A stretch of DNA of 64,000 bases from positions 363,327 through 427,326 of the forward strand of contig NW_003314364.1 in assembly GCF_000143415.4 (NCBI RefSeq). Direction: 5' to 3'. Under the pieces are notes generated by a model, which was not told where the DNA came from, did no database searches, and saw nothing but the letters and a program-made list of their open reading frames with translations. Below, one piece after another: positions 3,480 through 21,356 of this stretch. Each line of letters starts with the position of its first letter. Position 1 is the first letter of the stretch. The translations under genes and the position numbers were made by a program. The stretch is from Selaginella moellendorffii (taxonomy: Eukaryota; Plantae; Lycopodiophyta).

Positions 3480-3589
3480 ACATGTTACGCTTGTTTAGCT
3501 TTCGCTTTGGCCACCACCATATGGTGCCCTTTTGGCTCCACTTTGGGGCTTAAGGATTTGTGTCTCACACGTTATAAATCCCAAATCTT
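3480..3589 (-). mobile_element. Inverted ~110 bp fragment of the family A LTR 5' end
   Basis: Reverse complement reads TGTGAGACACAAATCCTTAAGCCCCAAAGTGGAGCC... Confidence 0.8.
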
Positions 3590-4610
3590 GTGTATACATC
3601 TTTTGATTCAGAACCTTTAGAACAAACATTGTGAGGCTATCAAAGTGCAAAAGGAAAATTTTTCACTTACACTTTATTATGAATAATAATTTTCTTATCA
3701 ATTTTTTTACCTATAACAATTTTTTATATAAAATAAAACTTAATTTTTTTATATACTCTCAAGTAAAGCTGATATAAAATTTTGTGATATACAATATAAA
3801 AAATATTAATCTTAATAAAATAAAGTTTGTATATATACTACAGTATTAAAATTCACCAAAATAAAGGTTCTGAAAAATGATTAAAAACTTATATAAAAAG
3901 TTTATATGTATAAGAAATAACAAATTAAATATAAAAATATATAGAGTAGTAATTGTATTTGCGATTTTTTTTAAATTCAATGCTGCAAATGTAGAGTATT
4001 TGAGAAAATGATTAGAAGTTTCTAAATATAAAAATAATAGATAATTTAAAATAAATTATAATTATATAAATTTTACAAGTTTAGAAACTATATTAAATAT
4101 TGTGATTATCATAAAAATAAAAAATAATGAAGATAAATTTGTATATATAAAGGAAACAATTATACTCCTAGAAGATTATGTAGAAGTTATACCATTAATA
4201 ATTATATAAATAATTACTGAGATAATAAGTTATTTTAAATGTGATTGAAAGGAAGATTATTATGTAAATAAAAATAAGTGTAAAATATTTAATATTTAAT
4301 TTTTTTAAATAAATATAATATATACATAATATTTTTTGGTTTTATAATGATAATAGTGCCTGTTATTAATCTAAACAAAAGAAACATTAATAAATAAAAA
4401 TAATCTAAAATGTTATATTAATATATTAATATAACATTAATATTAATATCTATCACATGTTTACCATCTTTTTATATCTACTGGCATCAATGGGAATTAT
4501 ATGCTCATTGGATTTGAACTTGGGTTATATCAGATTAGCATTTAAACCCTAAAAACCGGAATCTTATCTTGAACTTTAACCATTTTTAACTTTTAGGTTA
4601 TTTTTGGGTT

Positions 4611-7600
4611 TCACTTTTTCCGCTGGAGGCAACTCAATTTACTGAAAAGCCCGACTTTTACTCCATCCCCTGATGCGACTGCTTTCGAATAAATGTCCTT
4701 GCAACTCTGGAAAACCTGTATAGACAGATTAATATAGAGAGATTAACCAGATGACCAGTCTTTTACCTCTCGGACATCCTTCCTTGGAATACCTTCCCGC
4801 AGTGCTAATATTTTCTCTACCACCTCCGGCTGCCAGAAATATCAAACAGGATGAAGGCCCTTGGGTTGTGAACAGTACTTACAGGACAATCAGGATGGTT
4901 CTGTAACATATTGGTGTAAGCCAGTGTGAATGCTTCCAAACTCTCAGCAGATGCAAGGTCCCGAAATTCAGCTAGCGGTTGGACTCGTTTGGCTGCCTTC
5001 TACATAAGGATGAAGACGTTCGTCATAACAAGGTATATTGCAATATCTAGCTTACAGCGGGGCTGATATATTCTCTGAAAAAATCGGCAAGAATCTCCTC
5101 GTCTACTTTCATCCTTTCAAGCATGTCTTCTTTGATGTAGTTTCTCTGCAACACAGATGCGATTTGAGCTTTTTAAGGAAAAGAAGCAAACCTGTGTAAG
5201 GAGATGATCCACGTATATGACAATTGTCTCCTCTAGACAAGCCTCGGCAAACCTTCGAAACGATCTGTCCTCAATATACCTGCAAAACGCACATTGAAAG
5301 TCGGGTAGCTCGGTTAATCGTGTCTCACATCTTTACATCCCCAAAGTAATCGCCAAATGTTGCAACCAGGTACTCGGTCACAAGTCCTTCATGCCAATCT
5401 GCACAGACACGGATGTAAATCTACAATGTTGAACGGACTAGCAACCTTTCTGATAAAGTTTGACAAGTAGCTCCTTTACTCCAGGATCTTCAAAAATCAC
5501 CCTCACGGTTTGTTGGACGGCTTCCTACGAGAATGCACTTTGTCATCGCCTCATTCTACATCACCTCCCTCCTCACCTTGGCCACCTCAAGAAACCCTTT
5601 ACATGTGTCTTCAAAATTGACCTGACATGGTAAAACTGAGAGAAAGTGGAAGATAGATGAACTTTTACCTGTTCCGCATAGTATGGAGCAAGTGACTCCA
5701 TAATATTGCCGCTCAATTCCAAGGAGAGATCGTGACAACGAATGTTGTTATTAACCTTGAACGAAGGATGGTGGTTGAAGAGGGAAAGAAAAATGGAGTC
5801 TTTTACCATCGCACAAATGGCCTCAAGGCCGATTTCCGCCGCCGGCTCCTCAAGTCGATGCCGTTCTGCAGCCTGAAAATCGCCCATCACCTGACCAAGT
5901 ACAGCATTAACAGTTGCCTGAAACGTGCTGAATGCAAACCTGTATAACGGCGAGAGCAATACGGTAAAGCATTACATCTGTGCTGTTTTCCTGGACATTC
6001 TGAACCTGCTCCCCAAGTATCCTGAACAAATCCACAGCAGCTGGGGTCCATAGCTTTCCTTGATCTGTTTTCTTCGGCGGCTGCACTTTATCCGCCTCCA
6101 GGATGTTGGTGTACCATTTCTGATACAGCACGTAAGCATGAAACAAGAGCACGCAAGGTGGTACATTTCTTACCTGCATTGTTGATTGCATGCGATCCAC
6201 ATAGACATTCATTAGCGGGTCCATGGCTCCACTCTCTGCACATACTTGTGCTAAACTCTCGTCCACCCCCAAGTTTAGCAACTGCTCTTGATATTGTACA
6301 ACCCAGCTGGTTACCTGCAGAAGTGCAAAGTCACTCGAAACCTCCACTCTATATACCGACCTTGAGAATGTCGATATTGGACAGGTCACTTGCACGGTCA
6401 GCCAAGGCCCTCAGCATCTGGATGAAGCGCTCAGTATACAGCTGCACCATCAGCAGGAAGATCTCATAGCTGTAAGTTGCAGCAGCAAAGTCTCAGCACT
6501 TGAAAATGCACGCAGCCTAGACTGTACCGAGGAGGAAAGCACGGGGCCACAAAGTCATACACGTCCGGCAGCTCCCCGCCGATCTGCACAACGAGTTTAT
6601 CGCCGCGTAACAACAAGCTGAGAGGCAGAGAGGCTCACCGCATTCGCTTCATCCAATGCAGCGCTTAGCTCTTCCTTGACAAGCTGGTCACAAAGTTATC
6701 GTTTAAGCAGCAGCTCGCATTACACTACGCGGAGAGCATACCTTGGTAAGGAGCGTATGGAACCTGTCCTCCACGGACTTGCGTATCTCGTCATAGCAGC
6801 GATCTTTGTACCCCTTGCCGTTTTTAGGTGGTTGGTCAGGCTCGGACGCCACCCCGGACGCCACCGCGGACCTTGAAACAACCATTAGCCAAACTTGGTC
6901 ACGAGTTCTCGGGAACAGCGTTACTTTCGAGCGGCCCTGGTGTTGGATATGAGTGCCACCGGTCCAGCTCCCTCGGCTTCAGCAGCTTCTTCGGCATGCT
7001 GCTGATCCAGCACCTCCTGCATCTCCACTACCCTGCCAACACAAGTGAGTGAGTGAGAGAAATGACAATGGGGGCGAACCTGAGCGCACGAACGAGTGTC
7101 TGTGGGCTGCATGCAACGAAAAACATGGTGACACTGTCCGCACAGAAGCTAGAATGAACCTCTTTCGAGACAGCTGGTAGAAGTTCCTTATGTGATCCCA
7201 AAGCATTTGCTCAAACTTGTCCCGCGTCCTATTGACATCCTCAAAGTAGTCCCTGGAGAGGCACAACGTGAGAGAGACAATGTAACGAGGAGAGGAAACA
7301 ATGTGTGGCTGACCGCAGTTTCTTGGCTTCCTCCTTTCTGGAAGATGCTGTCGCCAGTGCAAATCGCTTCTTGCCTTCGAGGGCCGTCAGGCTCTGTATA
7401 GTCAGAAAGAAATGCCGGCAATGTTAGCAGCGAGTGTATAGGAAGTGAAAGTTTCATGCCTCGAAAGTCGTCACGAGTTCCTTGTCGTCGTTGAGCGATG
7501 CTCTGGCTTCCGCAGCCTCGACTGAAATGGACATCATCCCCTCCACGTCCTGCGAGCAAAACGTTCCGTGGGAGGAGCCTTTCTTTGTGTGGAGGAAGAA

Positions 7601-8080
7601 TACACACACCTTGAGCGTTGTGTTGAGATTGTTGCGGACGTTGCTAAGGAGCTTGATAAGATCGTGGTGCTCGATGAGCGTCTGGCATTCCTGGCACAGC
7701 CTGCGTCGCGCATGCGTGTATCACTTTTCTAGCTTTGAACTGGATCGTGTTTCTTACTTGTCAATAACGAGGAAATTGTCAGCTAGGCGAGCTATGGCGG
7801 CCTCCGAGGCGGTGAGCGCATCGATCCCGGCCTTGGCCTGCTCAACCTGTGCCATGACACTCGCACTGAGCTGCGCGTCATTCGCCTGGAGGGATCCGAC
7901 CGAAGGAATGGAGCGTGGATTTAGGCGCAGGAGTGGAAGTGTAACGAAGCCTACCTGCTGGCGCAAGGAGTAGTCAGTGCGGAGGATAGCGATGGAAGCG
8001 AGTGAGTCGGGATATGGCAGGAGCTTGGCAACCTCCCGCACGGCCGCCTCTTTGGCCTCCACTCCGAGCTCCTGCCACAT
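4611..8080 (-). CDS. SEC6: Exocyst complex component SEC6 (multi-exon)
   Basis: N-terminus [22 protein letters not shown]...ANDAQLS; exons [30 protein letters not shown] and [16 protein letters not shown] match plant SEC6; last exon [11 protein letters not shown]...LQRKK* with stop at 4611-4613; many short GT-AG introns. Confidence 0.93.
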
Positions 8081-8124
8081 TGCTACCTTAGGTCATTCGT
8101 TTGCTCAAGAGAGAAATACCTAGC

Positions 8125-8380
8125 ACTCGACGACGCTGCCAGCCGCGCCACATCCGAGCTCTACCCGGCGCTCAAGGATTCCGTGGCGCGGGACATCGGG
8201 CAGCCCTAGCCGCTGGGGTGGCGACGGTGGCGGAGTCATCGAGCTACGTGCTGCTTGGACGCGAGTGGACTGGCCGCTCACTTTCGTGCCTACTATCTTG
8301 ACAACCCTCCAGCTCCAGTCGGACCTCCGCGCCTTCCTCCACTCGCTATTCGCCCAGATGGCAGGCTTCTTCATCAGGGT
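8125..8380 (+). pseudogene. SEC15: Collapsed remnant of SEC15
   Basis: Ordered 15-35 bp blocks match SEC15 at ~11543 (GAGCTCTACCCGGCGCTCAAGG), ~11720 (GGGACATCGGGCAGC), ~11820, ~11868, ~11985 (GTGCCTACTATCTTGACAACC) and ~12085 (GCCCAGATGGC.GGCTTCTTCATC). Confidence 0.85.
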
Positions 8381-9996
8381 GTAGCAGCAGATGAGGTGGA
8401 TCACATACGGCCACTGGACAGCAGGTGAGAGTCGAGGCTCTGAATTGAGGTTCCAAACTTGGGCCCTTGTCGCAAAGGCCAGTTTTTGATTTGGAACAAG
8501 AACAGTAACAGCTGCAGAATCAGTAGCATCCTCATTCCTTGCAGCTGGAGGAATTGGACCACTTCTGGCATTGTGGAGCATGGCATAGCTTGCCTTTGTC
8601 CATCTCCACCACAAGTGGAAGTCACAAGCAACAACACTCTATGATCTTGAGCTGGATCCAGCCTTGACAGCTTCCACCTCCTTGAGGTGTATGATGAACC
8701 CATACTATGTGGTTTATGCTTACTCCAGTTATCTTTGATTCAACAACTGGAATTTGGAGTGTGAAGTCTCTTTATGTTCCTCCTGGAAGCAGTTATCCTC
8801 CTAATCCTTCTATGGGTTATGGTGGTGGCCTGGATATAGTGCACTAACAGGTGGGTTTCTTCGTCTTGTATTCTTGTGGTGGCTAATCAGGTGTTTAAAA
8901 TATGATTTAGTGTAAGTTATATACGAGACGGTTAAAAGCCCATTACCACTAAGAATATGTCGGATGGGGTATGTTCCGTCAACAAACCCATTTTAACCAT
9001 CTTTAACGGGAGGCAGGCACATGAAGTGACACGTGGCATATTTTTTGTATTAGTTGTTTGTGCCACATAAGCAATAATAGAAGCTCTCCACGGGTAACAG
9101 CGTGCCTGTGGATAACACCTAACTTCACTAGTTTAAATCCTCACAGGGACCTGAACCTTAGTATCAGAGTATTAGGGACTGTGAGAATTTAATCCTAATA
9201 GGACCATATCATGCTGAATAAGTGGGAGAAGCCGGTAGCGTTTCAATATATCGGGAAGGTTTTGAAGAGGAAGTTGAGACCACAACCTGCATCTGATTCA
9301 TATGAAAGGTCCACTCATTCTTGGCTATCTACCTGTGTAGAATGGGGTTGCTCAATCATAAGAGAGAGTAGGGAGTGTAGGAGGCTTGTTTCAATTGGTC
9401 TTATGCCTCCAGATGGGCACTAACAGACCCCAAAAACATGTATTATTCAGTTAAAGGGACAATTAACACTTGTGAGGCACACACTAGATGTGGAGGAAGA
9501 TGCATATCTAAAACCAAAGAGACATGGGAAAAGCTGAATCAAGTGCTGGATGCTTATTTGTGGAACCATGGCGACAGGAGCACCTCTTCCAGAATTGTTG
9601 TCATCACCTCATATCTGTGTGCATTCATATGCTCTGCAACACGTTAGTGGCCATCGTTATTTGGGAGTTTGTGCGAGATTTGTGGATGTCGTACCTCTGT
9701 CAAGGAAGATCGGCTATGGTTGACATCAAATATTGCGACAGGAAATGGTTTGAGTTTTTATAAGAATGATATTGAACACAGGAAGAAGTAAACCCTCCAG
9801 TCTATAGAATAACCACCTGTTTTCCTAGAGTAATCAGCTGCTCAATCGCAGTAGGCCTGAGCCAGCATCCGATTCTCCTCTCCCGCAGTAGCATAGCCAG
9901 CGCCTTCCATCTCCCTGCGTAAGGCCGCAAACGAGATCTTATCGATAGGCGGCAGTTCTACTCTGGCGAGTCCTTGGCAAGTAGCGCGGTGCTTAA

Positions 9997-11051
9997 CTCA
10001 TCCACCCCCAAGTTTAGCAACTGCTCTTGATATTGTATACCTGTTTAGAAGTTACTCGAAAGCTCCACAATGTACACCGACCTTGAGGATGTGGTCACTT
10101 GCACGGTCAGCCAGGGCCCTCAGCATCTGGATGAAGCACCCCGTATATAGCTGCACCATCACCAGGAAGATCTCATAGCTGTAAGTTGCAGCAGCAAAGT
10201 CTCAGCACTTGAAAATGCACGCAACCTAGACTGTACCACGGGGCCACAAAGTCATACACATCCGGCAGCTCCCCGCCGATCTGCACAGCGGGTTTATATC
10301 TGCGTCAGAACAAGCTGAGAGGCAGAGAGGCAGAGAGGCTCAACGCATTCGCTTCATCCCATGCAGCGCTTGGCTCTTCCTTGACAAGCTGGTCACAAAG
10401 TTCTGGAAGATGCTGTCGCCAGTGCAAATCCCTTCGAGGGCCATCTAAGTTAGGAAGAAATGCCGGCAAAGTTAGCAGCGAGTGTATAGGAAGTGAGAGT
10501 TTCATGCCTCCAAAGTCGTCACGAGTTCCTTGTCGTCATTGAGCGATGCTCTGGCTTCCGCAGCCTCGACTGAAATGGACATCATCCCCTCCACGTCCTG
10601 CGAGCAAAACGTACCGTGGGAGGAGCCTTTCTTTGAGTGGAAGAAGGATACACACACATTGAGCGTTGTGTTGAGATTGTTGCGGACGTTGCTGAGGAGC
10701 TTGATGAGATCGTGGTGCTCGATGATTCCTGGCACAGTCGGGCATGCACGTATCACTTTCCTCTTCGAACTGGAGATCGTCTTTCTTACTTGTCAATGAG
10801 TCAGCGAGGGAGCTATGGCGGCCTCCGAGGCTGTGAGCCCATCAACCTGTGCAATGACACTCGCACCGCACTGAGCTGCGCGTCATTCGCCTAGAGCGTG
10901 GATTTGCTTCGTTTGCTGCAACGAAGCAAACGTACCTGCTGGCGCAAGGAGCAGGATGGCGATGGAAGCGAATAGGGCAGGAGCTTCCCGCACAGGCGCC
11001 TCTTTGGCCTCCACCCCGAGCTCCTGCCACATTGTTACCTTTAGGTCATTC
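9997..11051 (-). pseudogene. SEC6: Deleted, frameshifted duplicate of the 5' half of SEC6
   Basis: Colinear with 6258-8098 including introns, with internal deletions and lost splice sites; retains [12 protein letters not shown] start at 11032. Confidence 0.92.
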
Positions 11052-11067
11052 ACAGGTAGGTAGCGAG

Positions 11068-13485
11068 ATGGCCGTGGCCAAGAGGGGAGGAGGAGGAGGA
11101 GGAGGAGCGGCGGCGGCGGCAGGGCAAGAGGACGAATCCACGACGCTGGCATCTGCGATTGGCAATGGTGAGGATCTGGGCACTTTGATCCGCGCGGCAT
11201 TCGAGATTGGACGGCCGGAGGCCCTGCTCCAGCAGCTCAAGGGCTTCGTCAAGAGCAAGGAGGGCGAGATCGAGGAGCTGTGCCGGGTGCACTACGAGGA
11301 GTTTATCCGCGCGGTGGACGAGCTGCGCAACGTGCTCGTCGACGCCGAGGAGCTCAAGAAGCGCCTCGCCGACGACAATGCGCAGATGCAAGAGGTGGGG
11401 AGATCGCTGCTGAGCTGCCTCGAGGAGCTCATCCAGTGGCACGCCACCCGTGCCAACGTGGCGGCCGCGGTGGAGGCGCTCCTCCACTGCAGCGGCGCCT
11501 TGGAGGCGTGCAGCCGCGTCAACTCTCACGTCGAGCGCGACGAGCTCTACCCGGCGCTCAAGGCAGTGGACTGCGTGGAGCGCGACTACTTGCAGCAGCG
11601 CAAGATGCCCGCCACCGCGCTGGCCAGCGCGCTGGAGCAGCACATCCCGCGCTTCCGGGGCTACGTGGAAAAGAAGGTGAGCGCCGAGTTTAGCGACTGG
11701 CTGGTGGACATCCGCGGGGTGGCACGGGACATCGGGCAGCTGTCCATGGGTGCCGCCTCAAGCGCTCGGCAGCGGGAGGAGGAGATGCGGGGGCGGCAGC
11801 GGCAGGCCGAGGAGCAGAGCCGCTGGGGTGGTGGCGGCGGAGGTGACCAGGAGCTGCAGTCGTCGTGCTACGTGCTGCTGGTGGACGCGAGTGGCGAGGA
11901 AGAGGAGGAAGCCGAGGTGGCCAAGCGCTTACAACTGACGCCCGTGTACCGTGCGCACTACATCCACGAGTGCCTGGGCCTGGGCGCTCACTTCCGTGCC
12001 TACTATCTTGACAACCGGCGTCTCCAGCTCCAGTCTGACCTCCATCTCCCGCCGGGGCCCTTCCTCGAGTGCCACCAGTCGCTCTTTGCCCAGATGGCGG
12101 GCTTCTTCATCGTTGAGGAGCGGGTGGCGCGCACCGCCGGCGGCCTGGTGGATGCCTTGGCGGTGGAGTCGCTGTGGGACACGGCGGTGACGCGCATGGC
12201 GTCGCTGGTGGAGGAGCAGCTGATGCGAATGCCAGGGGCCAACCACATTCTGCTGGTGGTGGACAACGCCAGCCTGCTGGCGGCGACACTGCGCGGCTAT
12301 GGCTACAACGTGGCGCCGCTGCTCGAGGCGCTGGACCGGTGCCGCGAGCGCTACCACGAGCTGCTGCTGGCGGAGCGGCGGGCCTCGGTGCACGACGTCC
12401 TCGCCAACGACAAGTTCGAACAGATGCTGCTGCGCAAGGAGTACGAGTATGGTATGCACGTAACCGCGTTTGGACTGCAGGCCAGCGACGCCACCCCGGC
12501 GTTCCCGTACGTGGCGCCCTTCTCCGCCAGCGTCCCCAACCTGTGCCGCATCGTTCGCTCCTTCACGGACGACTCGGTCAGCTTCCTGTCACACGCCGGC
12601 GGCGCGACCGACTACTACGACGCGGTCCGCCAGTACACGGACCGACTGCTGTCGACGAGCGTGGCGGAGGCGCTGCTCCGCCTGGTACGCAGCCCGACGC
12701 TGGGCATGTCCCAGGCCATGCAGCTGGCCGCCAACCTCACCGTGCTGGAGCGCGCATGCGACTTCTTCGCGGCGCACATTGCTCGCAGCTGCGGCGTGCC
12801 GCCGCGCCTGGCCGCCCCGCTGCAGTCGCGGGCGGTGCTCCGCAGCTCCCAGGCGGCGGCGCAGGAGCGGATGCTGGAGCTTGTCAACTCCAAGATCGAC
12901 GACTTCATGCTGCTGACGGCGCACATCGACTGGACGCCCGACGACGCGCCCGACCACGGCAACGCCTACCTCAACGAGGTGCTCATCTACCTGGAGACGC
13001 TCACGCCCAGCGCGCAGGCCATCCTGCCTCCGCACGCCTTCGACCGCTGGATCCGCGGAGTCCTCACGCACGTGTCCGACTGCATCGTCGCCACCTTTGT
13101 GTCGGACGACGTGCGCCGCTTCAACGTGCACTCGGTCATGGGCGTCGACGCCGACCTGCGGGTGCTCGAGTCGTTTGCGCACGAGCGCTTCGTCTCCACG
13201 CCGCAGCTGCAGGGGCTGGGTGGCGGCGCCGATCTCAAGAGCTGCCTGGCGGAGGCGAGGCAGCTCGTCAACCTGCTGCTGTCCAACCAGCCCGACCTCT
13301 TCCTCAACCCCGTGATCCGGGAGAGGAGCTACCCGGCGCTCGACTTCAAGAAGGTGATGGTGGTGGCGGAGAAGTACAAGGACCTGCCGGATCGCCTCTT
13401 CCGCGGTGTTGTTGGAGGGAGTAAGCCGGTAAGCAAGAGGAAGGCATTTGAGACGCTGGTGAAGCGGCTCAAGGAGTTTGTATAA
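11068..13485 (+). CDS. SEC15: Exocyst complex component SEC15 (intronless, SEC15B-like)
   Basis: 805-aa ORF: AIGNGEDLG...[63 protein letters not shown]. Confidence 0.95.
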   Translation: MAVAKRGGGGGGGAAAAAGQEDESTTLASAIGNGEDLGTLIRAAFEIGRPEALLQQLKGFVKSKEGEIEELCRVHYEEFIRAVDELRNVLVDAEELKKRLADDNAQMQEVGRSLLSCLEELIQWHATRANVAAAVEALLHCSGALEACSRVNSHVERDELYPALKAVDCVERDYLQQRKMPATALASALEQHIPRFRGYVEKKVSAEFSDWLVDIRGVARDIGQLSMGAASSARQREEEMRGRQRQAEEQSRWGGGGGGDQELQSSCYVLLVDASGEEEEEAEVAKRLQLTPVYRAHYIHECLGLGAHFRAYYLDNRRLQLQSDLHLPPGPFLECHQSLFAQMAGFFIVEERVARTAGGLVDALAVESLWDTAVTRMASLVEEQLMRMPGANHILLVVDNASLLAATLRGYGYNVAPLLEALDRCRERYHELLLAERRASVHDVLANDKFEQMLLRKEYEYGMHVTAFGLQASDATPAFPYVAPFSASVPNLCRIVRSFTDDSVSFLSHAGGATDYYDAVRQYTDRLLSTSVAEALLRLVRSPTLGMSQAMQLAANLTVLERACDFFAAHIARSCGVPPRLAAPLQSRAVLRSSQAAAQERMLELVNSKIDDFMLLTAHIDWTPDDAPDHGNAYLNEVLIYLETLTPSAQAILPPHAFDRWIRGVLTHVSDCIVATFVSDDVRRFNVHSVMGVDADLRVLESFAHERFVSTPQLQGLGGGADLKSCLAEARQLVNLLLSNQPDLFLNPVIRERSYPALDFKKVMVVAEKYKDLPDRLFRGVVGGSKPVSKRKAFETLVKRLKEFV

Positions 13486-13531
13486 CAACCAAGAAGAAAA
13501 AACCGAGATACCGATTGCTACCCGGCAGTAG

Positions 13532-14174
13532 TCAGTGAACTTTCTTCTTCGTGTCCGGCCCCGTCACCGCGGCCTGCTGCTGTGCCGTCAAGGACACCTT
13601 GTTCACTTCGTACACGAAGAGGAGCGAGAAGATGAAGCTGCGTTGAGAGGGAGCGGAGTGAGCAATCTCTTTCTCTTTAGAGACAAGGAGAGGATGGCTC
13701 CTTACCATGTGGTGATGCACACTCTATGTACCGCCCCGGCAGCAACGCAAGCGATGAGCTCCGCCGCAAGCACTGCACGCACACACCGCAAGAGTTTCAG
13801 CCTTTCCTCCACACCAAAACCTTCGTTTTCTACTCACCAGCACCCCATCCGGTTCGGCTGCCCAGTAACTCCTGGAGGTTGCCAATCATCTGCAGGGAGA
13901 GATCGGGGAGATCGCAATCAGCCTACACGCGAAACCACTCGAGACTCACAGTGAGCGCGAGGAGGAAGAGGAGCGAGCTGATGAATCCGCCCAGGATGGT
14001 GTAGAGCTCCGACGACGCCAGCGTCTTCTTGTTCATCTGCTGCAAGGACAGCGTGACAACAAAGACGAGAAATGCGTAGAGCATCGAATTGGGCGGGCTG
14101 GTGCCGCTGCTGCGCTTGCTCTTGCCCTTGTGATCTCCGGCCGGAGCGGCGGCGGCACCAGTGGCGGCAGCCAT
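13532..14174 (-). CDS. KRTCAP2: Keratinocyte-associated protein 2 (KCP2) homologue, oligosaccharyltransferase accessory subunit; 4 exons
   Basis: LASSELYTILGGFISSLLFLLALT / IGNLQE..GWGA / AELIACVAAGAVHRVCITT / FIFS..YEVNKVS joined by GT-AG introns. Confidence 0.88.
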
Positions 14175-14267
14175 CGCGCGGTGAGAGAGAAGAGAGGAAT
14201 ATTGACTTGTGCCCTACCTATACTTTTTACCTAGGGCATTGCTTGCTCGCTGCTGGGAGCGAGGGAC

Positions 14268-15688
14268 ATGGGAGGGCGCGACACATCTCTAGGGCAAGAG
14301 CTCTTCCTCTACGCCGTCAGCGCCGCCTTGAGCTGCCTGGTCCTCTTCGTTGGGGTGCGCCATCTCGACCCAAATCGCTACCAGGCCAAGAAAGCCGCCG
14401 AGCGCAAGAAGGAGATTGCCAAGCGCCTGGGCCGCTCACTGGTGCAAACCAACAGCTATGAGGTACTACTCCCTGTTTCCCTGCATTGCTTGCTTGCTCC
14501 TAGTGAAATCGCGAGTGTCTCAACTCTAGGACATGATCGCCTGTGATGTGATCAACCCCGAGGACATTGACGTAACCTTCGACTCCATTGGCGGCCTCGA
14601 GGACGTCAAGAGCTCGCTGTTCGAGCTCGTCATCCTCCCTCTCCAGCGCCCGGAGCTGTTTGCTCATGGCAAGCTGCTGGGACCTCAGAAGGGAGTGCTG
14701 CTCTACGGGCCTCCCGGCACCGGCAAGACGTTGCTGGCCAAGGCGATTGCCAAGGAGTCGCGAGCCGTCTTCATCAACGTCCGGATTGCCACTCTCATGT
14801 CCAAGTGGTTCGGAGACGCTCAGAAGCTCGGTAAACCTCTCCTCCTCTCCTCGCTTTCTTCGGCTGCTTGCCGCCAACCGCGTTTCACTTGACTCTTGTT
14901 GGTGCAGTCACCGCCGTCTTCTCTCTCGCGTACAAGCTGCAGCCATCCATCATTTTCATCGACGAGGTTGACAGCTTTCTGGGGCAGAGGCGTGCGACGG
15001 AGCACGAATCCATGACTCACATGAAGACGGAGTTCATGGCACTCTGGGACGGCTTCACAACTGACCGTAAGTATGCCGTGGTTGGAAGCCGAAACGGATG
15101 AAGAAGCTCCTGAGCTGTGTTGTGTGTGCAGAGAGTGCCAGGGTCATGGTTCTCGCCGCCACCAACAGGCCATGGGAGCTCGACGAAGCCATCCTCCGCC
15201 GGCTTCCCCGCGCGTTCGAGGTGGGCATGCCGGATGCGAGGCAGCGTGCCAGCATTCTGCGGGTCATTCTCAAAGATGAGGCGGTGGAGGACGAGGTGAA
15301 CATCGACTATCTGGCGAGCCTGACCGAGAACTACAGTGGCTCCGACTTGACGGAGCTGTGCAAGCAGGCCGCCTATCTTCCCATAAGGGACCTGCTGGAG
15401 AAGGAGAAGAACGGGCACTCGAGCGAGCAACAGGTGACTGAGCTCTCCTCCCATAGCTTGATTGATCTCATCTGTGTGGATTGGTGGCAGACGGCCAGGC
15501 CTCTCAAGCAGAGCGACTTCGAGACGGTGCTGCAAAACGCTCGCAGTTCCAAGGACGCTGCGTACGACTACCAAAACCGGCGGCAGTTTGAGCAGCAGCA
15601 GCAGCCGCAGGAGGTGTCCATCACTGACGTTCTGCAGCTCTTGGCGGCGTTTGGTGCCGCTGGCAACAGCCGAGGCCGTTCCAGCTGA
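14268..15688 (+). CDS. AAA+ ATPase, Msp1/ATAD1 family (membrane dislocase)
   Basis: N-terminal hydrophobic anchor, Walker A GPPGTGKT, Walker B IIFIDEVD, MKTEFMALWDG, VLAATNRP.LDEAILRR. Confidence 0.9.
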
Positions 15689-15903
15689 ACAAACAAGGCC
15701 ATAAATTCTTCCGGCTTTTTCACATTTTGGCGAGAGCGAGAGCGTGGAAGAGGCGATACAGGTATTACGTCGATGCCTTGGCTTGCTTCTGGCATGGGCG
15801 CAGACAAGAAACGGCACTTAGGTAGCTATAGCCGCGCTTGTACCGTTTGTACGTGTAAAATCGATGCAAACCATGCCCTAAGTTAAAGAGTACAGCGAGC
15901 GAG

Positions 15904-17997
15904 ATGAGCTTGGCGGAGGTGTACGCTTGTATGCCCAGTGTGGAGCGTGGGCGGGGAATTCTCGTGGATGGCGATGCCAGATCGAGCTGGATCATCTACT
16001 GCAATGGTCGCAGCGTCGTGATTCGCAGCCTGGTGCAGCCCCTGCTCGTGGATGTCTACTGCCAGCACGCGTACCCGGTGAGTGTGGCCAGGATCTCGCC
16101 GAACGCGCAATGGATAGCCTCGGCGGACGTGTCCGGCATTGTCAGGATCTGGGGCGCCACCGGGGATCACATACTCAGGCACGAGTACACCGCTCTCTCG
16201 GGGCGCATCGATGACTTGCAATGGTCACACGATGGCCAGCGCATTGTTGTGTGCGGCGACGGCAAAGGGAAGTCATTCGTCCGAGCGTTCAGGTGAGTGC
16301 CGTGGCTGGCTGGGCTTTGTTTCTGGATGGGATGGATTCCTACAACCATGATGTCTCTATAGCTGGGACACGGGCACCAGCATTGGAGACTTCGAGGGCA
16401 GCTCCAAGCGCGTCTTGAGCTGCGCATTCAAGCCCACGCGGCCGTTCCGGATCGCCACCGGCGGGGAAGACTTCGTTGTCAACTTCTACGAGGGTCCGCC
16501 TTTCAAGTTCACTGCCTCTCACAGGTATGGTTTCGTTTCTCTGCTTTTCGTTTGCGGCACGTTGATACGAGCTTTGCCAACCAAGAGATCATACCAACTT
16601 CGTCAACTGTGTGCGCTTTGCTCCCGACGGCACCAAGTTCGTCACGGCTGGATCCGACAAGAAGCTCATCGTGTTCGACGGGAAGACGGGTAGCAGAACT
16701 GGCCTCGTCTCGTCCTCGTCCGATGGGCATACAGGCAGCATTTACGCTGTGAGCTGGAACGCAAGCAGCAGCCAAGTAAGACTACCTCGGTGCCGTGTTA
16801 CCTCTCTAAGTCTTTTGCCCAGGTGGTGACAGTATCCGCGGACAAAACCGCTAAGCTGTGGAGCATAGCGGGAGATGGATCCGGCGGGAGCCTGGAGGCA
16901 ACTTTCTGCTCGTCAGACGTGCAACTCGGCTGTCTTTGGCTCAACGATTCCATCGTCACCTTCTCCCTGGATGGCAGGATGAACGTTTTGTCAGCAACCG
17001 GAGACCTGACGGCACCAGACAAGGTGCTCTCCGGACACTCCAAGAGCATCACGGCTGTTTCCGCATCGGGCACGGACATTTACTCGAGCAGCTACGACGG
17101 GGTCATTGTCAAGTGGAGACTTGGAGAGGGCTTTGTAGCTCGCCTCGACGGCAATGGCTTCTCCTCCAGTGTCTCCGGCTTGAGAGCTGTTGCTGGGAGT
17201 GAGGATACATTTGTGGCATGCGGGCAAACCAAGGTATGGTATGCCACCTTTACTCGGTACTCTAACCGAGCTTTTGGATCTCACAGCTCTCAAGAATTGT
17301 GGGAGGGACCGAGAGCACGATTGATCTGGGAGCAGCTTGCGTCGGGTTCTCGATTGCTCCCTGCAGAGATGGTGAGGTGGTGCTGGCCTGCACAGAGCAA
17401 GAGCTGATCCTGCTCAGAGACTTTGCTGTCGTCTCCCGGCTATCACTTCGTTTTACAGCTACTGCTGTTGCAGTCTCCCCAGACGCGAAAGCTGCCGTAG
17501 TTGGGGACAAAGATGGCAAGCTGCACCTGTTCTCGCTCGGTGAGGACGGACTGCACCAGGAAGCCTTGCTCGAACGTCATCGTGCATCTGTCACGGCACT
17601 CGAGTTCTCCCCGGATGGCACGATGTTCGCTTCGGGTGATCAAAACCGGGAAGCTTTTGTGTGGGACGCAGTCAAGAGAGAGGTACCTCCCTTTGCATTT
17701 TGCTTTCTCTACTTTACTCACAAGTCTGCGGTTGATGTTCCACTGCAGGTCAAGCTGAAAAACATGCTCTATCACACCACGAGCATCCAGTGCATTGCGT
17801 GGGCTGTGGACAGCTCCAAGGTTGCGACTGGGGGTGTAGACGGTTGCATCTATGTTTACTACGTGGACCGGCCTGCTTCAGCGCGGATATCTATCAGAGG
17901 AGCTCATCCGGGCGGTGTGAGCGGCCTGGCCTTCGCAGACGTTAGCGAGCTTGTTAGTGGCGGGCAAGATGCATTTCTCCGGGTGTGGAAGTCCTAG
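15904..17997 (+). CDS. AIP1: Actin-interacting protein 1 (WD40 repeat)
   Basis: [15 protein letters not shown] start, [28 protein letters not shown]; multiple WD40 repeats; short GT-AG introns. Confidence 0.92.
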
Positions 17998-18110
17998 AGC
18001 TTGTTGTGTTTGTGTTTGTGTTTGTGTTTCTGGCTTTAAGTTGACACCATGATTGCTCAAAATGGTGGTTTTCTAAAGCCATGGCCGCCATGGAACTATG
18101 GAACTAGAGT

Positions 18111-18156
18111 TACGTGATAATCCAATCATTCATTCGTGGGCATGAGGACGTGGCAG
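18111..18156 (+). promoter_or_regulatory. Candidate light-responsive elements upstream of PRK (ACGT/GATAA, CCAAT, ACGTGGC G-box-like)
   Basis: TACGTGATAATCCAATC and GACGTGGCA lie ~190-230 bp upstream of the ATG of a Calvin-cycle gene; short motifs only. Confidence 0.4.
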
Positions 18157-18340
18157 GCCATCTGCTGAGCACCACACAATCTTCCCTCCACTGCTGAGAG
18201 AGGAGGGGCTTGGCTTAGTGCACGCTTGCTCGGGCCTAGCTTCGCCACCAGGGGCCATCGCTGCCCTCTGCGCTCGACGCACTGTGGCTTGATTACTCGC
18301 TTACACTCCGCATTGGAGTGTTTTGTTTGATCGATCGACC

Positions 18341-19865
18341 ATGGCAGCGGCTTGCAGCAGCAGCGGCAGCAGCAGCCGAATTGGGTGGTTCCAGGCTAGC
18401 TCCAGTAGCAGCAACATCGGCATACTGCAGCACCACCCGTGGAGAGGATCGCATGCCTCTTCATTGTTTTCCTTCCCCAAGCTCGGAGCCCGGATTGGCA
18501 GCAGCGGCGGCGGCAGTGGCAGCAGCGGCAGCAGCAGCAGCAGGGTGAGAGTCCTGGTTTGTTGTGCGGCTGGTGGCGATGGCAAGACGATTGTGATTGG
18601 TCTGGCAGCAGACTCTGGGTGCGGCAAGAGCACATTCATGAGGCGGCTGACGAGCGTGTTTGGGGGAGCAGCGTCGCCTCCTAAAGGTGGGAATCCCGAC
18701 TCCAACACGCTCATCAGCGACACCACCACGGTCATCTGCCTGGACGACTACCACTCGCTGGACAGGACGGGCAGGAAGGAGAAAGGGGTGACGGCGCTGG
18801 ATCCGAAGGCCAACAATTTCGATCTTATGTACGAGCAGGTCAAGGCACTCAAGGAAGGCAAAGCTGTCCAGAAGCCCATCTACAACCACGTATCGGGGTT
18901 GCTTGACCCTCCGGAACTCATCCAGTCACCCAAGATCCTTGTCATTGAAGGTCTCCACCCCATGTAAGTAAGCTTTAACTTGAAAGACTAAGTTGACGCG
19001 CCAACATGACGGTCTTGTTGTGTTTCCAAGGTTCGATTCTAGAGTGAGAGAGCTCCTCGACTTCAGTATATACCTTGATATCAGCGATGCTGTCAAGTTT
19101 GCTTGGAAGATCCAGGTGAGTGGGTGCAAACATAAGTCTTTGTATTGAAACTCTTTGGCAGCGAGATATGGCCGAGAGGGGACACAGCCTGGAGAGCATC
19201 AAGGCCAGCATTGCTGCCCGCAAGCCCGACTTTGATGCTTACATAGGTGACCAGTTGATTTGCTTTCAAGATATGTATATCAAGCTGCGGTGTTGAAACA
19301 GACACACAGAAGCAGTACGCAGACGTGGTGATTCAAGTGCTTCCCACGCAGCTCATTCCAGACGACAACGAAGGCAAAGTCCTTCGCGTTCGGATGATCA
19401 TGAAAGAGGGCGTTGACAACTTTGAGCCCGTCTACCTGTTTGACGAAGGCTCCACAATCTCGTGGATACCTTGCGGGAGGAAGCTCACGTGTTCTTACCC
19501 GGGGATTAAGTTCTTCTACGGCCCAGACATTTACTATGACAACGAGGTGAGTTTGATTGCTCACTGCGCTTTGAACAGTGGCGAACCATTACTGTGCAAT
19601 GCAGGTGTCAGTGCTGGAGATGGATGGACAGTTTGACAAACTGGACGAGCTCATCTACGTGGAAAGCCACCTGAGCAACATCTCGACCCGCTTCTACGGG
19701 GAGATCACGCAGCAAATGCTCAAGCACGCCGACTTCCCGGGCAGCAACAACGGCACGGGCTTGTTCCAGACCATTGTGGGCCTCAAGATCAGAGATGTGT
19801 TTGAGCGCATCACCTCCAAGCAAGGCTCCCCCGTTGGGGCGGCAGCAGCCACCTCCAAGGTCTAA
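18341..19865 (+). CDS. PRK: Phosphoribulokinase, chloroplastic
   Basis: Ser-rich transit peptide; IVIGLAADSGCGKSTFMRR, ICLDDYHSLDR, LEMDGQFDKLDELIYVESHL, FPGSNNGTGLFQT. Confidence 0.97.
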
Positions 19866-19992
19866 TTATTGCTGTATCGTATCACGTTATCTTCTTACGA
19901 TAAAGATGACATAGATAAATATATAATAGACCAGACCCTGTTTCCAAGTGTTTCCAAGTGTTTCCACGTAGAGCGAGAAGAGGGCGGTGATT

Positions 19993-21177
19993 ATGGGCGA
20001 TGTCCAAGAGCAGGAGAACCTGGGCGCCTGGCTGGTGGCGGCCAACACAATTCGCGTGGAGCCGTTTAAGCTGCCCCCGACTGGCAGCGATGAAGTTAAG
20101 GTCCAGATGAAGGCGGTCGGTATCTGTGGCAGCGATGTCCACTACTACCGGGTAAGCTTGATTGTGAACTTGATCTCGTGGATTCCTCATCTTTGCTTGA
20201 TGTAGCACCTCCGTTGCGCGGATTTCGTGGTGACAGAGCCGATGGTGATCGGGCACGAGTGCGCGGGGCTGGTTGTGGAGGTGGGCAGTAATGTGAAGCA
20301 TCTCAAGGTTGGGGACCGCGTGGCGCTGGAGCCCGGCGTCTCGTGTAGCCACTGCACACACTGCAAGACCGGCTCCTACAACCTCTGCCCCGAGATGAAG
20401 TTCTTCGCCACGCCCCCCATCCATGGATCGCTCGCAAACTACGTAAGTACTCGTGTCTATGGAACTATGGAACTCACTTTGTGATGGAACTCACAGGTGG
20501 TCCATCCGGCGGAGCTGTGCTTCAAGCTGCCGGATGGCGTGTCCGTGGAGGAGGGCGCCATGTGTGAGCCGCTGAGCGTGGGTGTCCACGGGTGCCGGAG
20601 GGCGGGCATCGTCCCAGGCGTCCGGCTCCTCGTGCTGGGTGCCGGACCCATCGGCCTGGTGACAATGCTGGCGGCCAGAGCCTTCGGCGCCACACGGATT
20701 GTGGTCACGGACGTGGACGCGTCTCGCCTGGCGGTGGCTGCGCAGCTGGGAGCGCCGGACGTGAGCACGGTGCTGGTGTCGACCAAGACCGAGGACGTGG
20801 AGGCGGAGGTGCGAGAGATCCAGGGCGTGGCGGGGGGAGAGGTGGACGTGGCCATGGACTGCGTGGGGGTGGGCAAGACGATGCTGACGGCGCTGCGAGC
20901 GAGCAAGGCGGGGGGCAAGGTGTGCCTCATCGGCATGGGGCACACCGAGATGACGCTGCCGCTCACGGGCGCGGCGGCGGCGCGAGAGGTGGACGTGGTG
21001 GGCGTTTTTCGTTACCGCAACACGTACCCGCTGTGCATCCAGCTGCTCGAGTCCAAGCGCATCGATGTCAAGCCGCTCATCACGCACCGCTTTGGATTCT
21101 CGCAGCAGGAGGTTGTGGAGGCGTTTGAGACGAGTGCCAAAGGTGGCAGCGCCATCAAGGTCATGTTCAACCTCTAG
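19993..21177 (+). CDS. SDH: Sorbitol dehydrogenase / L-idonate 5-dehydrogenase (zinc MDR family); 3 exons
   Basis: [15 protein letters not shown], structural-zinc C-x2-C-x2-C-x7-[25 protein letters not shown]. Confidence 0.93.
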
Positions 21178-21356
21178 ATCCTCGTAGTAGCTACCCTGTT
21201 ACATCTATGGTTCTATGGTTCTATCGTTCCCTTGTGAAACGAATTGGGCATTGTGCTCTTGCCGCGCTAGGTAGCGCTTAAGCGAGAGGAGAGAGACAGA
21301 ATAGAGCCTAGTTTTAGGGCAAGGGCACATTGTTTGGAGGAGGAGGAGGAGAGATC

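What the first reader, a model, noticed from the sequence alone, without database searches (positions are those of the whole stretch)
4611..13485. Head-to-head exocyst pair SEC6/SEC15 duplicated in tandem and resolved by reciprocal loss
Seen: the layout is [SEC6 intact <- -> SEC15 remnant] ... [SEC6 remnant <- -> SEC15 intact]. Both units share the junction CATTG(C/T)TACCTT(T)AGGTCATTC. Knowledge: SEC6 and SEC15 are non-paralogous subunits of the same octameric, dosage-sensitive complex. Inference: an ancestral divergent pair of two subunits of one complex was duplicated, then each copy kept the opposite gene. This restores 1:1 dosage while uncoupling the shared promoter.
Basis: partly seen in the sequence, partly recalled or inferred. 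Interest (0 to 1): 0.8.

Follow-up and report, generated by a model that had tools for sequence, protein, structure and literature searches.

The report
Partial tandem duplication at SEC6/SEC15
In the spikemoss Selaginella moellendorffii, a roughly 2.9-kb piece holding the front halves of two back-to-back exocyst genes (SEC6 and SEC15) was copied in tandem. That automatically left one whole copy of each gene plus two never-complete fragments, which are now decaying, so this is an ordinary, known kind of event and not a case of reciprocal gene loss.

Summary
Intact SEC6 (4611-8080, minus strand) abuts a SEC15 remnant (8099-8375). A SEC6 remnant (9978-11032) abuts intact, intronless SEC15 (11068-13485). 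Both units share the junction motif, and the start codons lie 35 nt apart. The window is Selaginella moellendorffii scaffold GL377668.1. The second haplotype scaffold (GL377642.1) has the same layout, and independent DNA and RNA contigs bridge the junctions, so it is not an assembly artefact.

"Reciprocal loss" is not supported. Homology stops abruptly at SEC6 codon ~387 and SEC15 codon 348. The 1.6-kb spacer shares no 12-mers with either gene's 3' half or flanks (positive controls: 39 and 397). The simplest history is one tandem duplication with both breakpoints inside the genes, the "dual promoter" geometry of Rogers et al. 2014. In that case neither gene was ever redundant and dosage never changed.

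The copies form a clean ((A1,A2),(B1,B2)) tree. Intron divergence between them is 8.6%, against 2.3% between alleles. The remnants evolve at the neutral rate and lose DNA through many small deletions, as the spacer does. A spliced plus-strand RNA crosses the SEC15 remnant, and the SEC6 remnant has low RNA coverage. SEC6-SEC15 adjacency is absent in Marchantia and Physcomitrium. Interest is modest.

The parts
4611..8080 (-). Intact SEC6 gene (CDS from stop to start codon, 743 aa, many short introns)
   Evidence: Annotated 743-aa product with Pfam Sec6. tblastn covers residues 2-748 of plant SEC6 P0123. Twelve introns between 6315 and 7954 are confirmed by RNA joints. The 5' 387 codons read open in both haplotypes.
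6235..8375 (.). Duplicated unit A: the intact 5' half of SEC6, the junction and the decayed 5' part of SEC15
   Evidence: Gapped alignments to unit B; four-way haplotype comparison.
8078..8098 (.). Junction motif, copy A (SEC6 start codon read as CAT at 8078-8080, plus 18 nt)
   Evidence: Sequence read directly; aligned at 93-100% to 11030-11051.
8099..8375 (+). SEC15 remnant: a colinear mosaic of about 18 patches of 3-40 nt (80-100% identical) from SEC15 codons ~79-348; the start codon and first ~78 codons are deleted
   Evidence: alignment. Sixteen deletions, mostly shared with haplotype 2. tblastn to SEC15 residues 231-348. Allelic divergence 2.75%, which is the neutral rate.
8376..9977 (.). 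Spacer of unknown origin between the two remnants. It is non-coding, unique in the window and present in both haplotypes.
   Evidence: No shared 12-mers with SEC6/SEC15 3' halves or flanks. No Pfam, Rfam or tRNA hits. No copy elsewhere in the window. Aligned to haplotype 2.
8851..8910 (+). GT..AG intron of a plus-strand non-coding transcript that runs from unit A through the SEC15 remnant into the spacer (coverage to about 9180)
   Evidence: Joint 8848->8909 (cut +2, GT..AG) in three RNA runs; RNA contigs continuous from 7954 to 8848. Canonical only on the plus strand, and no ORF crosses it.
9978..11032 (-). SEC6 remnant (exons 1-13 equivalent). The start codon is kept. Exons 1, 2 and 5 are frameshifted, exons 6-9 are removed by a 640-bp deletion private to this haplotype, and several splice sites are lost.
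   Evidence: Allelic divergence 2.18%, close to the intron rate. Low-depth RNA contigs at 10008-10430 and 10699-11022.
9978..12111 (.). Duplicated unit B: the decayed 5' half of SEC6, the junction and the intact 5' part of SEC15
11033..11067 (.). The 35-nt interval between the SEC6-type start codon (CAT 11030-11032) and the SEC15 ATG (11068), which is the core of the divergent promoter region
   Evidence: Sequence. The SEC15 RNA contig begins at 11034.
11068..13485 (+). Intact intronless SEC15 gene (805 aa)
   Evidence: ORF. Pfam Sec15_C and EXOC6_Sec15_N. PDB Sec15 matches. Identical to the annotated protein P0001. RNA contigs.

Best explanation
In an ancestor of S. moellendorffii, SEC6 and SEC15 lay head to head with only 35 nt between their start codons. 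One direct tandem duplication copied about 2.9 kb, from inside SEC6 (about codon 387, exon 13) to inside SEC15 (codon 348). Because both breakpoints lie inside the genes, the product is automatically: whole SEC6, a 5' fragment of SEC15, a 5' fragment of SEC6, then whole SEC15. This is the 'dual promoter' geometry. The two inner fragments were never complete genes. A 1.6-kb stretch of unrelated DNA lies at the duplication joint, either as filler laid down at the event or as a later insertion. Since then the fragments have drifted neutrally and are being eroded by many small deletions at the same rate as the spacer. Both copies of the divergent promoter region still seem to fire outward and inward, so the fragments give non-coding transcripts. 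Shown here: the layout, the boundaries, the absence of 3' halves, presence in both haplotypes, the tree, the neutral rates and the spliced plus-strand RNA. Inferred: that it was a single event, the origin of the spacer, and the strand of the RNA over the SEC6 remnant.
For: - Both units end abruptly at the same points in both haplotypes.
- tblastn finds nothing of SEC6 beyond residue 384 or SEC15 beyond residue 348 in the middle section.
- The spacer shares 0 12-mers with either 3' half or either downstream flank, on either strand, whereas the remnants share 39 and 397 with their intact partners.
- The second haplotype scaffold has the same layout with its own private mutations.
- DNA contig 8299-8518 and RNA contigs 7954-8848 bridge the A/spacer junction. 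DNA contig 9733-10008 reaches 31 nt across the B junction.
- The four-way tree is ((A1,A2),(B1,B2)) with 47 fixed sites and no conversion patterns.
- Intron divergence between A and B is 8.6%, against 2.3% between alleles.
- Allelic divergence of the remnants (2.2-2.75%) equals that of introns (2.34%); SEC6 exons show 0.69%.
- The allelic indel-to-substitution ratio is 0.36 in both the SEC6 remnant and the spacer, against 0.08 in the genes.
- The geometry is described as 'dual promoter genes' in PMC4069613, Fig. 9.
Against: - A full duplication of both genes followed by one clean deletion of everything between SEC15 codon 348 and SEC6 codon 387 would leave the same picture. Only parsimony separates the two histories.
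- The 1.6-kb spacer is unexplained. A simple unequal exchange would join 12111 directly to 6235.
- No pre-duplication relative was available for comparison.
- The RNA evidence comes from unstranded assembled contigs, so only the one GT..AG joint gives a strand.
- The DNA run has a gap at 9185-9383 and loose ends around 8936-9443.
Confidence: 0.7

Rival explanations
1. The whole head-to-head pair (both complete genes) was duplicated in tandem. The inner SEC15 and inner SEC6 were then lost, by independent decay or by one medial deletion, which restored single-copy dosage.
For: The final layout is compatible with it. Deletions are frequent in this DNA, so a large medial deletion is conceivable. 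A 640-bp deletion private to one haplotype shows that large losses do occur.
Against: There is no trace of either 3' half or of either downstream flank in the middle, although patches as short as 10-40 nt survive at 80-100% identity in the recognised remnants. Both boundaries are sharp and identical in the two haplotypes. It also needs at least one more event than the partial-duplication model.
Confidence: 0.18
2. The duplication was favoured by selection because it separated two essential genes whose 5' ends overlapped. Each gene gained a private promoter copy with a disposable partner fragment as upstream buffer, and the remnants or their transcripts now have a regulatory role.
For: The start codons are only 35 nt apart, so the ancestral transcripts or promoters must have overlapped. 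RNA contigs show overlapping transcription across junction A and a spliced plus-strand RNA through the SEC15 remnant. The structure is fixed in both haplotypes. Both genes are effectively single-copy in this species (PMC3399122).
Against: The remnants diverge between haplotypes at the neutral intron rate, and they lose DNA at the same rate as the spacer. The first 249 nt of SEC15 sequence next to the SEC6 start codon, where an ancestral SEC6 promoter would lie, are deleted in unit A in both haplotypes. There are no expression comparisons with a pre-duplication state.
Confidence: 0.1
3. The layout is an assembly artefact, for example from collapsing or mis-joining the two haplotypes of this heterozygous assembly.
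For: The assembly is known to contain both haplotypes. The DNA contigs laid here are short, and none spans the whole stretch.
Against: Two separate scaffolds each carry the whole layout, and the copies form a ((A1,A2),(B1,B2)) tree. A-B divergence is about three times B1-B2 divergence and about six times A1-A2 divergence. Independent DNA and RNA contigs from later studies cross the junctions.
Confidence: 0.02

Closest known systems
'Dual promoter genes' formed by tandem duplications whose two boundaries both fall inside coding sequences (Rogers et al. 2014, Mol Biol Evol, PMC4069613, Fig. 9)
   Same: Direct tandem duplication with both breakpoints inside genes. The joint carries two 5' gene fragments with promoters on opposite strands that face each other. 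The flanking genes stay whole. Transcripts arise from the fragments.
   Different: Those cases are young, segregating variants in Drosophila. This one is fixed in both haplotypes of a lycophyte, is old enough to show 8.6% neutral divergence, has a 1.6-kb spacer at the joint, and its fragments are heavily eroded.
Reciprocal gene loss or divergent resolution after duplication (as seen after whole-genome or segmental duplication)
   Same: The end state has one functional copy of each gene, on different duplicated units.
   Different: That process needs two complete copies of each gene at the start. Here there is no evidence that the inner copies were ever complete.
Head-to-head gene pairs with bidirectional promoters that encode subunits of one complex
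   Same: Two exocyst subunit genes diverge from a 35-nt interval between start codons, and RNA contigs overlap across the junction.
   Different: The adjacency is not conserved in Marchantia or Physcomitrium. Co-regulation was not tested. The region now exists in two copies, each serving one real gene.

Membership tests
Exocyst subunit Sec15 (Pfam PF04091 / PF20651) | Full-length match to the Sec15 N- and C-terminal domain models in an open reading frame | tested here: met
   11068-13485: Sec15_C 1.2e-86 over 1-348/348 and EXOC6_Sec15_N 5.6e-42 over 1-170/170. PDB Sec15 chains 2a2f and 5yfp match.
Exocyst subunit Sec6 (Pfam PF06046) | A spliced gene encoding a full-length Sec6 protein | tested here: met
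   Annotated 743-aa product with PF06046. tblastn to residues 2-748 of a 756-aa SEC6. An exon ORF hits Sec6 at 4.5e-13. Introns are confirmed by RNA joints.
Direct tandem segmental duplication | Two copies in the same order and orientation on one molecule, closer to each other than chance allows | tested here: met
   Both haplotype scaffolds carry them. Junction-bridging contigs exist. The copies are separated by a 1.6-kb spacer, so they do not directly abut.
Dual promoter structure (Rogers et al. 2014) | Both duplication boundaries lie inside coding sequences of the flanking genes | tested here: met
   The boundaries fall in SEC6 exon 13 (6235; codon ~387) and at SEC15 codon 348 (12111). No 3' sequence of either gene lies in the middle.
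Dual promoter structure (Rogers et al. 2014) | Transcription enters the joint from both promoters on opposite strands | tested here: inconclusive
   A plus-strand spliced RNA from unit A is shown by a GT..AG joint in three runs. The SEC6 remnant is covered by low-depth RNA contigs, but their strand is unknown.
Reciprocal loss after whole-gene duplication | Evidence that each lost copy was once a complete gene (remnants of its 3' part or flank) | tested here: not met
   The spacer shares 0 12-mers with the 3' halves or flanks, against 39 and 397 in the positive controls. tblastn and relaxed blastn/tblastx find nothing.
Conserved bidirectional gene pair | Head-to-head arrangement kept in related lineages | tested here: not met
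   No SEC6 gene call or tblastn hit within 10 kb of SEC15 in Physcomitrium (L003) or Marchantia (L005, L006), nor within 3.7 kb upstream of SEC15 on an unidentified plant contig (L007). No other Selaginella genome was reachable.

The most novel reading that the evidence does not exclude
The duplication was fixed because it untangled two essential, single-copy exocyst genes whose 5' ends overlapped, with only 35 nt between the start codons. Each gene got a private copy of the divergent promoter. The partner fragments persist as transcribed buffers whose non-coding RNAs, facing each other across the spacer, modulate SEC6 and SEC15 expression.
Probability: 0.08. Interest if true: 0.6.

Novelty: new member of a known kind. 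Interest (0 to 1): 0.3.

Why it matters
It is a clean, datable plant example of how a tandem duplication that ignores gene boundaries can mimic reciprocal gene loss. Anyone inferring dosage-driven resolution from an "intact/remnant ... remnant/intact" layout should first check whether the remnants were ever complete.

It also documents three other things:
- a 35-nt head-to-head arrangement of two exocyst subunit genes that is specific to the Selaginella lineage among the plants tested;
- transcription that persists from both copies of a duplicated divergent promoter;
- a high neutral indel-to-substitution ratio (about 0.36) that erodes dead DNA quickly in this very compact genome.

None of this overturns current understanding.

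Tried and rejected
- **Whole-gene duplication:** I looked for 3' halves or flanks of SEC15 and SEC6 in the spacer by tblastn, a k-mer test with shuffles and relaxed blastn/tblastx. Nothing was found.
- **Spacer as a LINE fragment:** by eye the plus-strand frames looked like the zinc-binding tail of a LINE reverse transcriptase. Pfam scans of six spacer ORFs at E <= 10 gave no hit, so I dropped the idea.
- **Spacer as a structured RNA, tRNA/SINE or terminal-repeat element:** there are no Rfam or tRNA hits, and only short, chance-level inverted and direct repeats.
- **Microhomology-mediated deletion as the erosion mechanism:** flanking microhomology is 0.71 and 0.65 nt per deletion, against 0.68 and 0.83 for random placement. 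This is not informative.
- **Gene conversion between the units:** no 0101 or 0110 site patterns were seen.
- **Retrieving the Selaginella SEC6 proteins:** a search with an Alnus SEC6 query returned only angiosperm hits in the top 120.
- **Diphasiastrum SEC15:** no context is on record. The Adiantum locus has no DNA available.
- **The scan's own notes searched by spacer sequence:** blank.
Full report
**Identity of the window.** The 805-aa ORF at 11068-13485 is identical to protein P0001, which is encoded on Selaginella moellendorffii scaffold GL377668.1 (GCA_000143415.2). Window coordinates equal locus L001 coordinates plus 1067. The annotation there calls a 743-aa Sec6 protein at window 4611-8080 on the minus strand and the 805-aa Sec15 at 11068-13485 on the plus strand. 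Pfam confirms both: Sec15_C 1.2e-86, EXOC6_Sec15_N 5.6e-42, and a SEC6 exon at 4.5e-13. Sec15 also matches PDB chains 2a2f and 5yfp. A 756-aa plant SEC6 (P0123) aligns by tblastn to 8080-4614 over its residues 2-748.

**The observation.** Self-BLAST of 4000-14500 against the window gives 6248-8098 matching 9989-11051 and 8234-8375 matching 11858-12111, all in direct orientation. Gapped alignment refines this to unit A = 6235-8375 and unit B = 9978-12111. Inside aligned blocks, identity is 93% on the SEC6 side and 90% on the SEC15 side. The low BLAST identities (73-89% across the four matches; 77-82% for the two long SEC6-side ones) come from many deletions in the remnants. The shared junction motif is at 8078-8098 and 11030-11051. 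In unit B the SEC6-type start codon (CAT, 11030-11032) and the SEC15 ATG (11068) are separated by only 35 nt.

**State of the four gene parts.** Using the twelve introns confirmed by RNA joints, the 5' 387 codons of the intact SEC6 read open in both haplotypes. The SEC6 remnant keeps its start codon. However, exons 1, 2 and 5 are frameshifted in both haplotypes, exons 6-9 are removed in this haplotype by a 640-bp deletion (equivalent to 6696-7335), and several splice sites are gone. The SEC15 remnant is a colinear mosaic of about 18 patches of 3-40 nt, each 80-100% identical to the intact gene. In it, 1,060 nt have shrunk to about 280 nt, and the ATG and first ~78 codons are missing.

**Were the inner copies ever complete?** Homology stops abruptly at SEC6 codon ~387 (6235/9978) and at SEC15 codon 348 (12111/8375), at the same points in both haplotypes. 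tblastn finds no SEC6 residues beyond 384 and no SEC15 residues beyond 348 in the middle of either haplotype. The 1,602-nt spacer (8376-9977) shares 0 12-mers with the SEC15 3' half, the SEC6 3' half, or 2.5 kb of either downstream flank, on either strand. The remnants share 39 and 397 12-mers with their partners, against shuffle means of 0.04 and 0.23. Relaxed blastn and tblastx of the spacer against the rest of the window find nothing. Patches of 10-40 nt survive at 80-100% identity in the recognised remnants, so comparable patches of the 3' halves should be visible had they been there. A direct tandem duplication of about 2.9 kb with both breakpoints inside the genes yields [quoted passage not shown] in a single step. 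Rogers et al. 2014 describe this geometry as "dual promoter genes" (PMC4069613, Fig. 9). Under this history neither gene was ever redundant, so there was no dosage imbalance to resolve and no reciprocal loss. A full duplication followed by one clean medial deletion cannot be excluded, but it needs an extra event and has no positive evidence.

**Not an artefact, and age.**
- The other haplotype scaffold, GL377642.1 (L002), was found through the allelic Sec15 (P0122). It has the same layout: window 4559-9638 aligns at 94.8%, 9716-10406 at 94.4% and 10401-23541 at 97.5%.
- At 978 sites present in all four SEC6-side copies, the tree is ((A1,A2),(B1,B2)). There are 47 fixed A|B differences and no conversion-type patterns. 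Distances are A1-A2 1.0%, B1-B2 2.35% and A-B 6.0-7.1%.
- At intron sites, A-B divergence is 8.6% against 2.3% between alleles. The duplication is therefore about 3.7 times as deep as the coalescence of the two haplotypes.
- Most deletions are shared by the haplotypes, but each has private ones, so erosion is continuing.
- In an independent DNA run, a contig (8299-8518) bridges the A/spacer junction, and another (9733-10008) reaches 31 nt across the B junction. RNA contigs from three studies run unbroken from SEC6 exon 1 (7954) to 8848.

**Are the remnants constrained?** The table shows allelic substitution divergence.

| Compartment | Allelic divergence |
|---|---|
| SEC6 exons | 0.69% |
| SEC15 CDS | 1.04% |
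| SEC6 introns | 2.34% |
| SEC6 remnant | 2.18% |
| SEC15 remnant | 2.75% |
| Spacer | 2.5-4.4% |

Allelic indel events per substitution are 0.08 in both intact genes, 0.36 in the SEC6 remnant, 0.36 in the spacer and 0.71 in the SEC15 remnant (5 indels to 7 substitutions). The remnants therefore behave like neutral DNA, and their moth-eaten look reflects the local neutral indel rate and not a special process. Microhomology at the deletion ends is at chance level. The 249 nt of SEC15 sequence nearest the SEC6 start codon are deleted in unit A in both haplotypes. That argues against an indispensable SEC6 promoter in that stretch.

**Transcription.**
- The SEC6 introns appear as CT..AC joints, with one GC donor at 7394-7459.
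- A joint at 8848->8909, canonical only as a plus-strand GT..AG intron (8851-8910), appears in all three RNA runs, and coverage reaches about 9180. A plus-strand RNA therefore leaves unit A through the SEC15 remnant into the spacer. It has no ORF across the splice.
- The same contigs also carry minus-strand SEC6 introns. This is expected if the divergent transcripts overlap at their 5' ends and the strand-blind assembler merged them.
- The SEC15 contig in one run starts at 11034.
- Low-depth RNA contigs cover the SEC6 remnant (10008-10430 and 10699-11022), but their strand is unknown.
- Both promoter copies thus seem active in both directions. That fits the dual-promoter picture and weakens "uncoupling" as a functional claim. 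All of this rests on assembled, unstranded contigs.

**Context in other plants.** SEC15 is intronless in Marchantia, and in Physcomitrium it has a single ~100-nt gap. No SEC6 gene call or tblastn hit lies within 10 kb of SEC15 in either species, nor within 3.7 kb upstream on an unidentified plant contig. The nearest Sec15 to the Selaginella protein is only 58% identical (Diphasiastrum), and its locus was not on record. No pre-duplication relative could therefore be examined. Cvrckova et al. 2012 list one Sec15 and two Sec6 for S. moellendorffii and warn that such pairs probably reflect allelic haplotypes (PMC3399122). Both genes are therefore effectively single-copy, and that paper does not mention this arrangement.

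**The spacer.** Its origin is unresolved. It has no Pfam, Rfam or tRNA hits, no significant repeats and no copy in the window. It is present in both haplotypes.

**Verdict.** The best reading is a fixed, ageing partial tandem duplication of dual-promoter type at a lineage-specific, very tight head-to-head SEC6/SEC15 pair, followed by neutral, deletion-rich decay of two fragments that were never whole genes. It is a new example of a known kind and of modest interest.

Noticed in passing
L002:3316-9805 (haplotype 2, GL377642.1): The SEC6 gene model on the other haplotype spans 6.5 kb and starts at an internal Met of the remnant's exon 2 (MAQVDGL...). The intact copy there has its own normal start ([10 protein letters not shown]...) at L002 6786. 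This is probably an annotation chimera caused by the duplication. A 137-aa gene call at L002 8803-9287 also lies inside the remnant.
   Followed up: partly
window 8936-9443: All four runs, including the DNA run, have no coverage at 9185-9383. The DNA run shows contigs with unlike flanks (loose ends) at 8936, 8987, 9396 and 9443. This could be a short repeated element, a structural polymorphism in that sample, or the tool's filter. Allelic divergence is also highest here (4.4%).
   Followed up: partly
window 8071-8118: One RNA run (X5, labelled as a different organism) has a minus-strand CT..AC joint 8070->8119 that would splice out the annotated SEC6 start codon (8078-8080). This suggests SEC6 transcripts starting upstream of 8119 and an alternative 5' intron.
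   Followed up: no
window 7394-7459: This SEC6 intron uses a GC donor (CT..GC on the plus strand). The joint is supported in three RNA runs, and the GC is kept in both remnant copies.
   Followed up: no
window 8099-11051 and L002 equivalent: Neutral DNA here has a high allelic indel-to-substitution ratio: 0.36 in the spacer and the SEC6 remnant, against 0.08 in the genes. Indels are mostly 1-40 nt. This may be relevant to how the compact genome sheds dead DNA.
   Followed up: partly
window 3500-4500: The stretch just downstream of the SEC6 stop codon is extremely AT-rich (GC 19%) and contains short TATATTAA-type repeats (4414-4449).
   Followed up: no
window 11082-11107: A (GAG)9 repeat encodes a glycine run near the SEC15 N-terminus. 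The two haplotypes differ by a 3-nt indel at 11107-11109 and by a further 12-nt indel in the CDS (805 vs 808 aa).
   Followed up: no
window 13532-24000 and L002:12471-22427: The downstream genes are colinear and 97.5% identical between the two haplotype scaffolds. They are a Keratin_assoc-domain protein, an AAA ATPase, a WD40 protein, phosphoribulokinase, a zinc-type alcohol dehydrogenase and a beta-adaptin.
   Followed up: no
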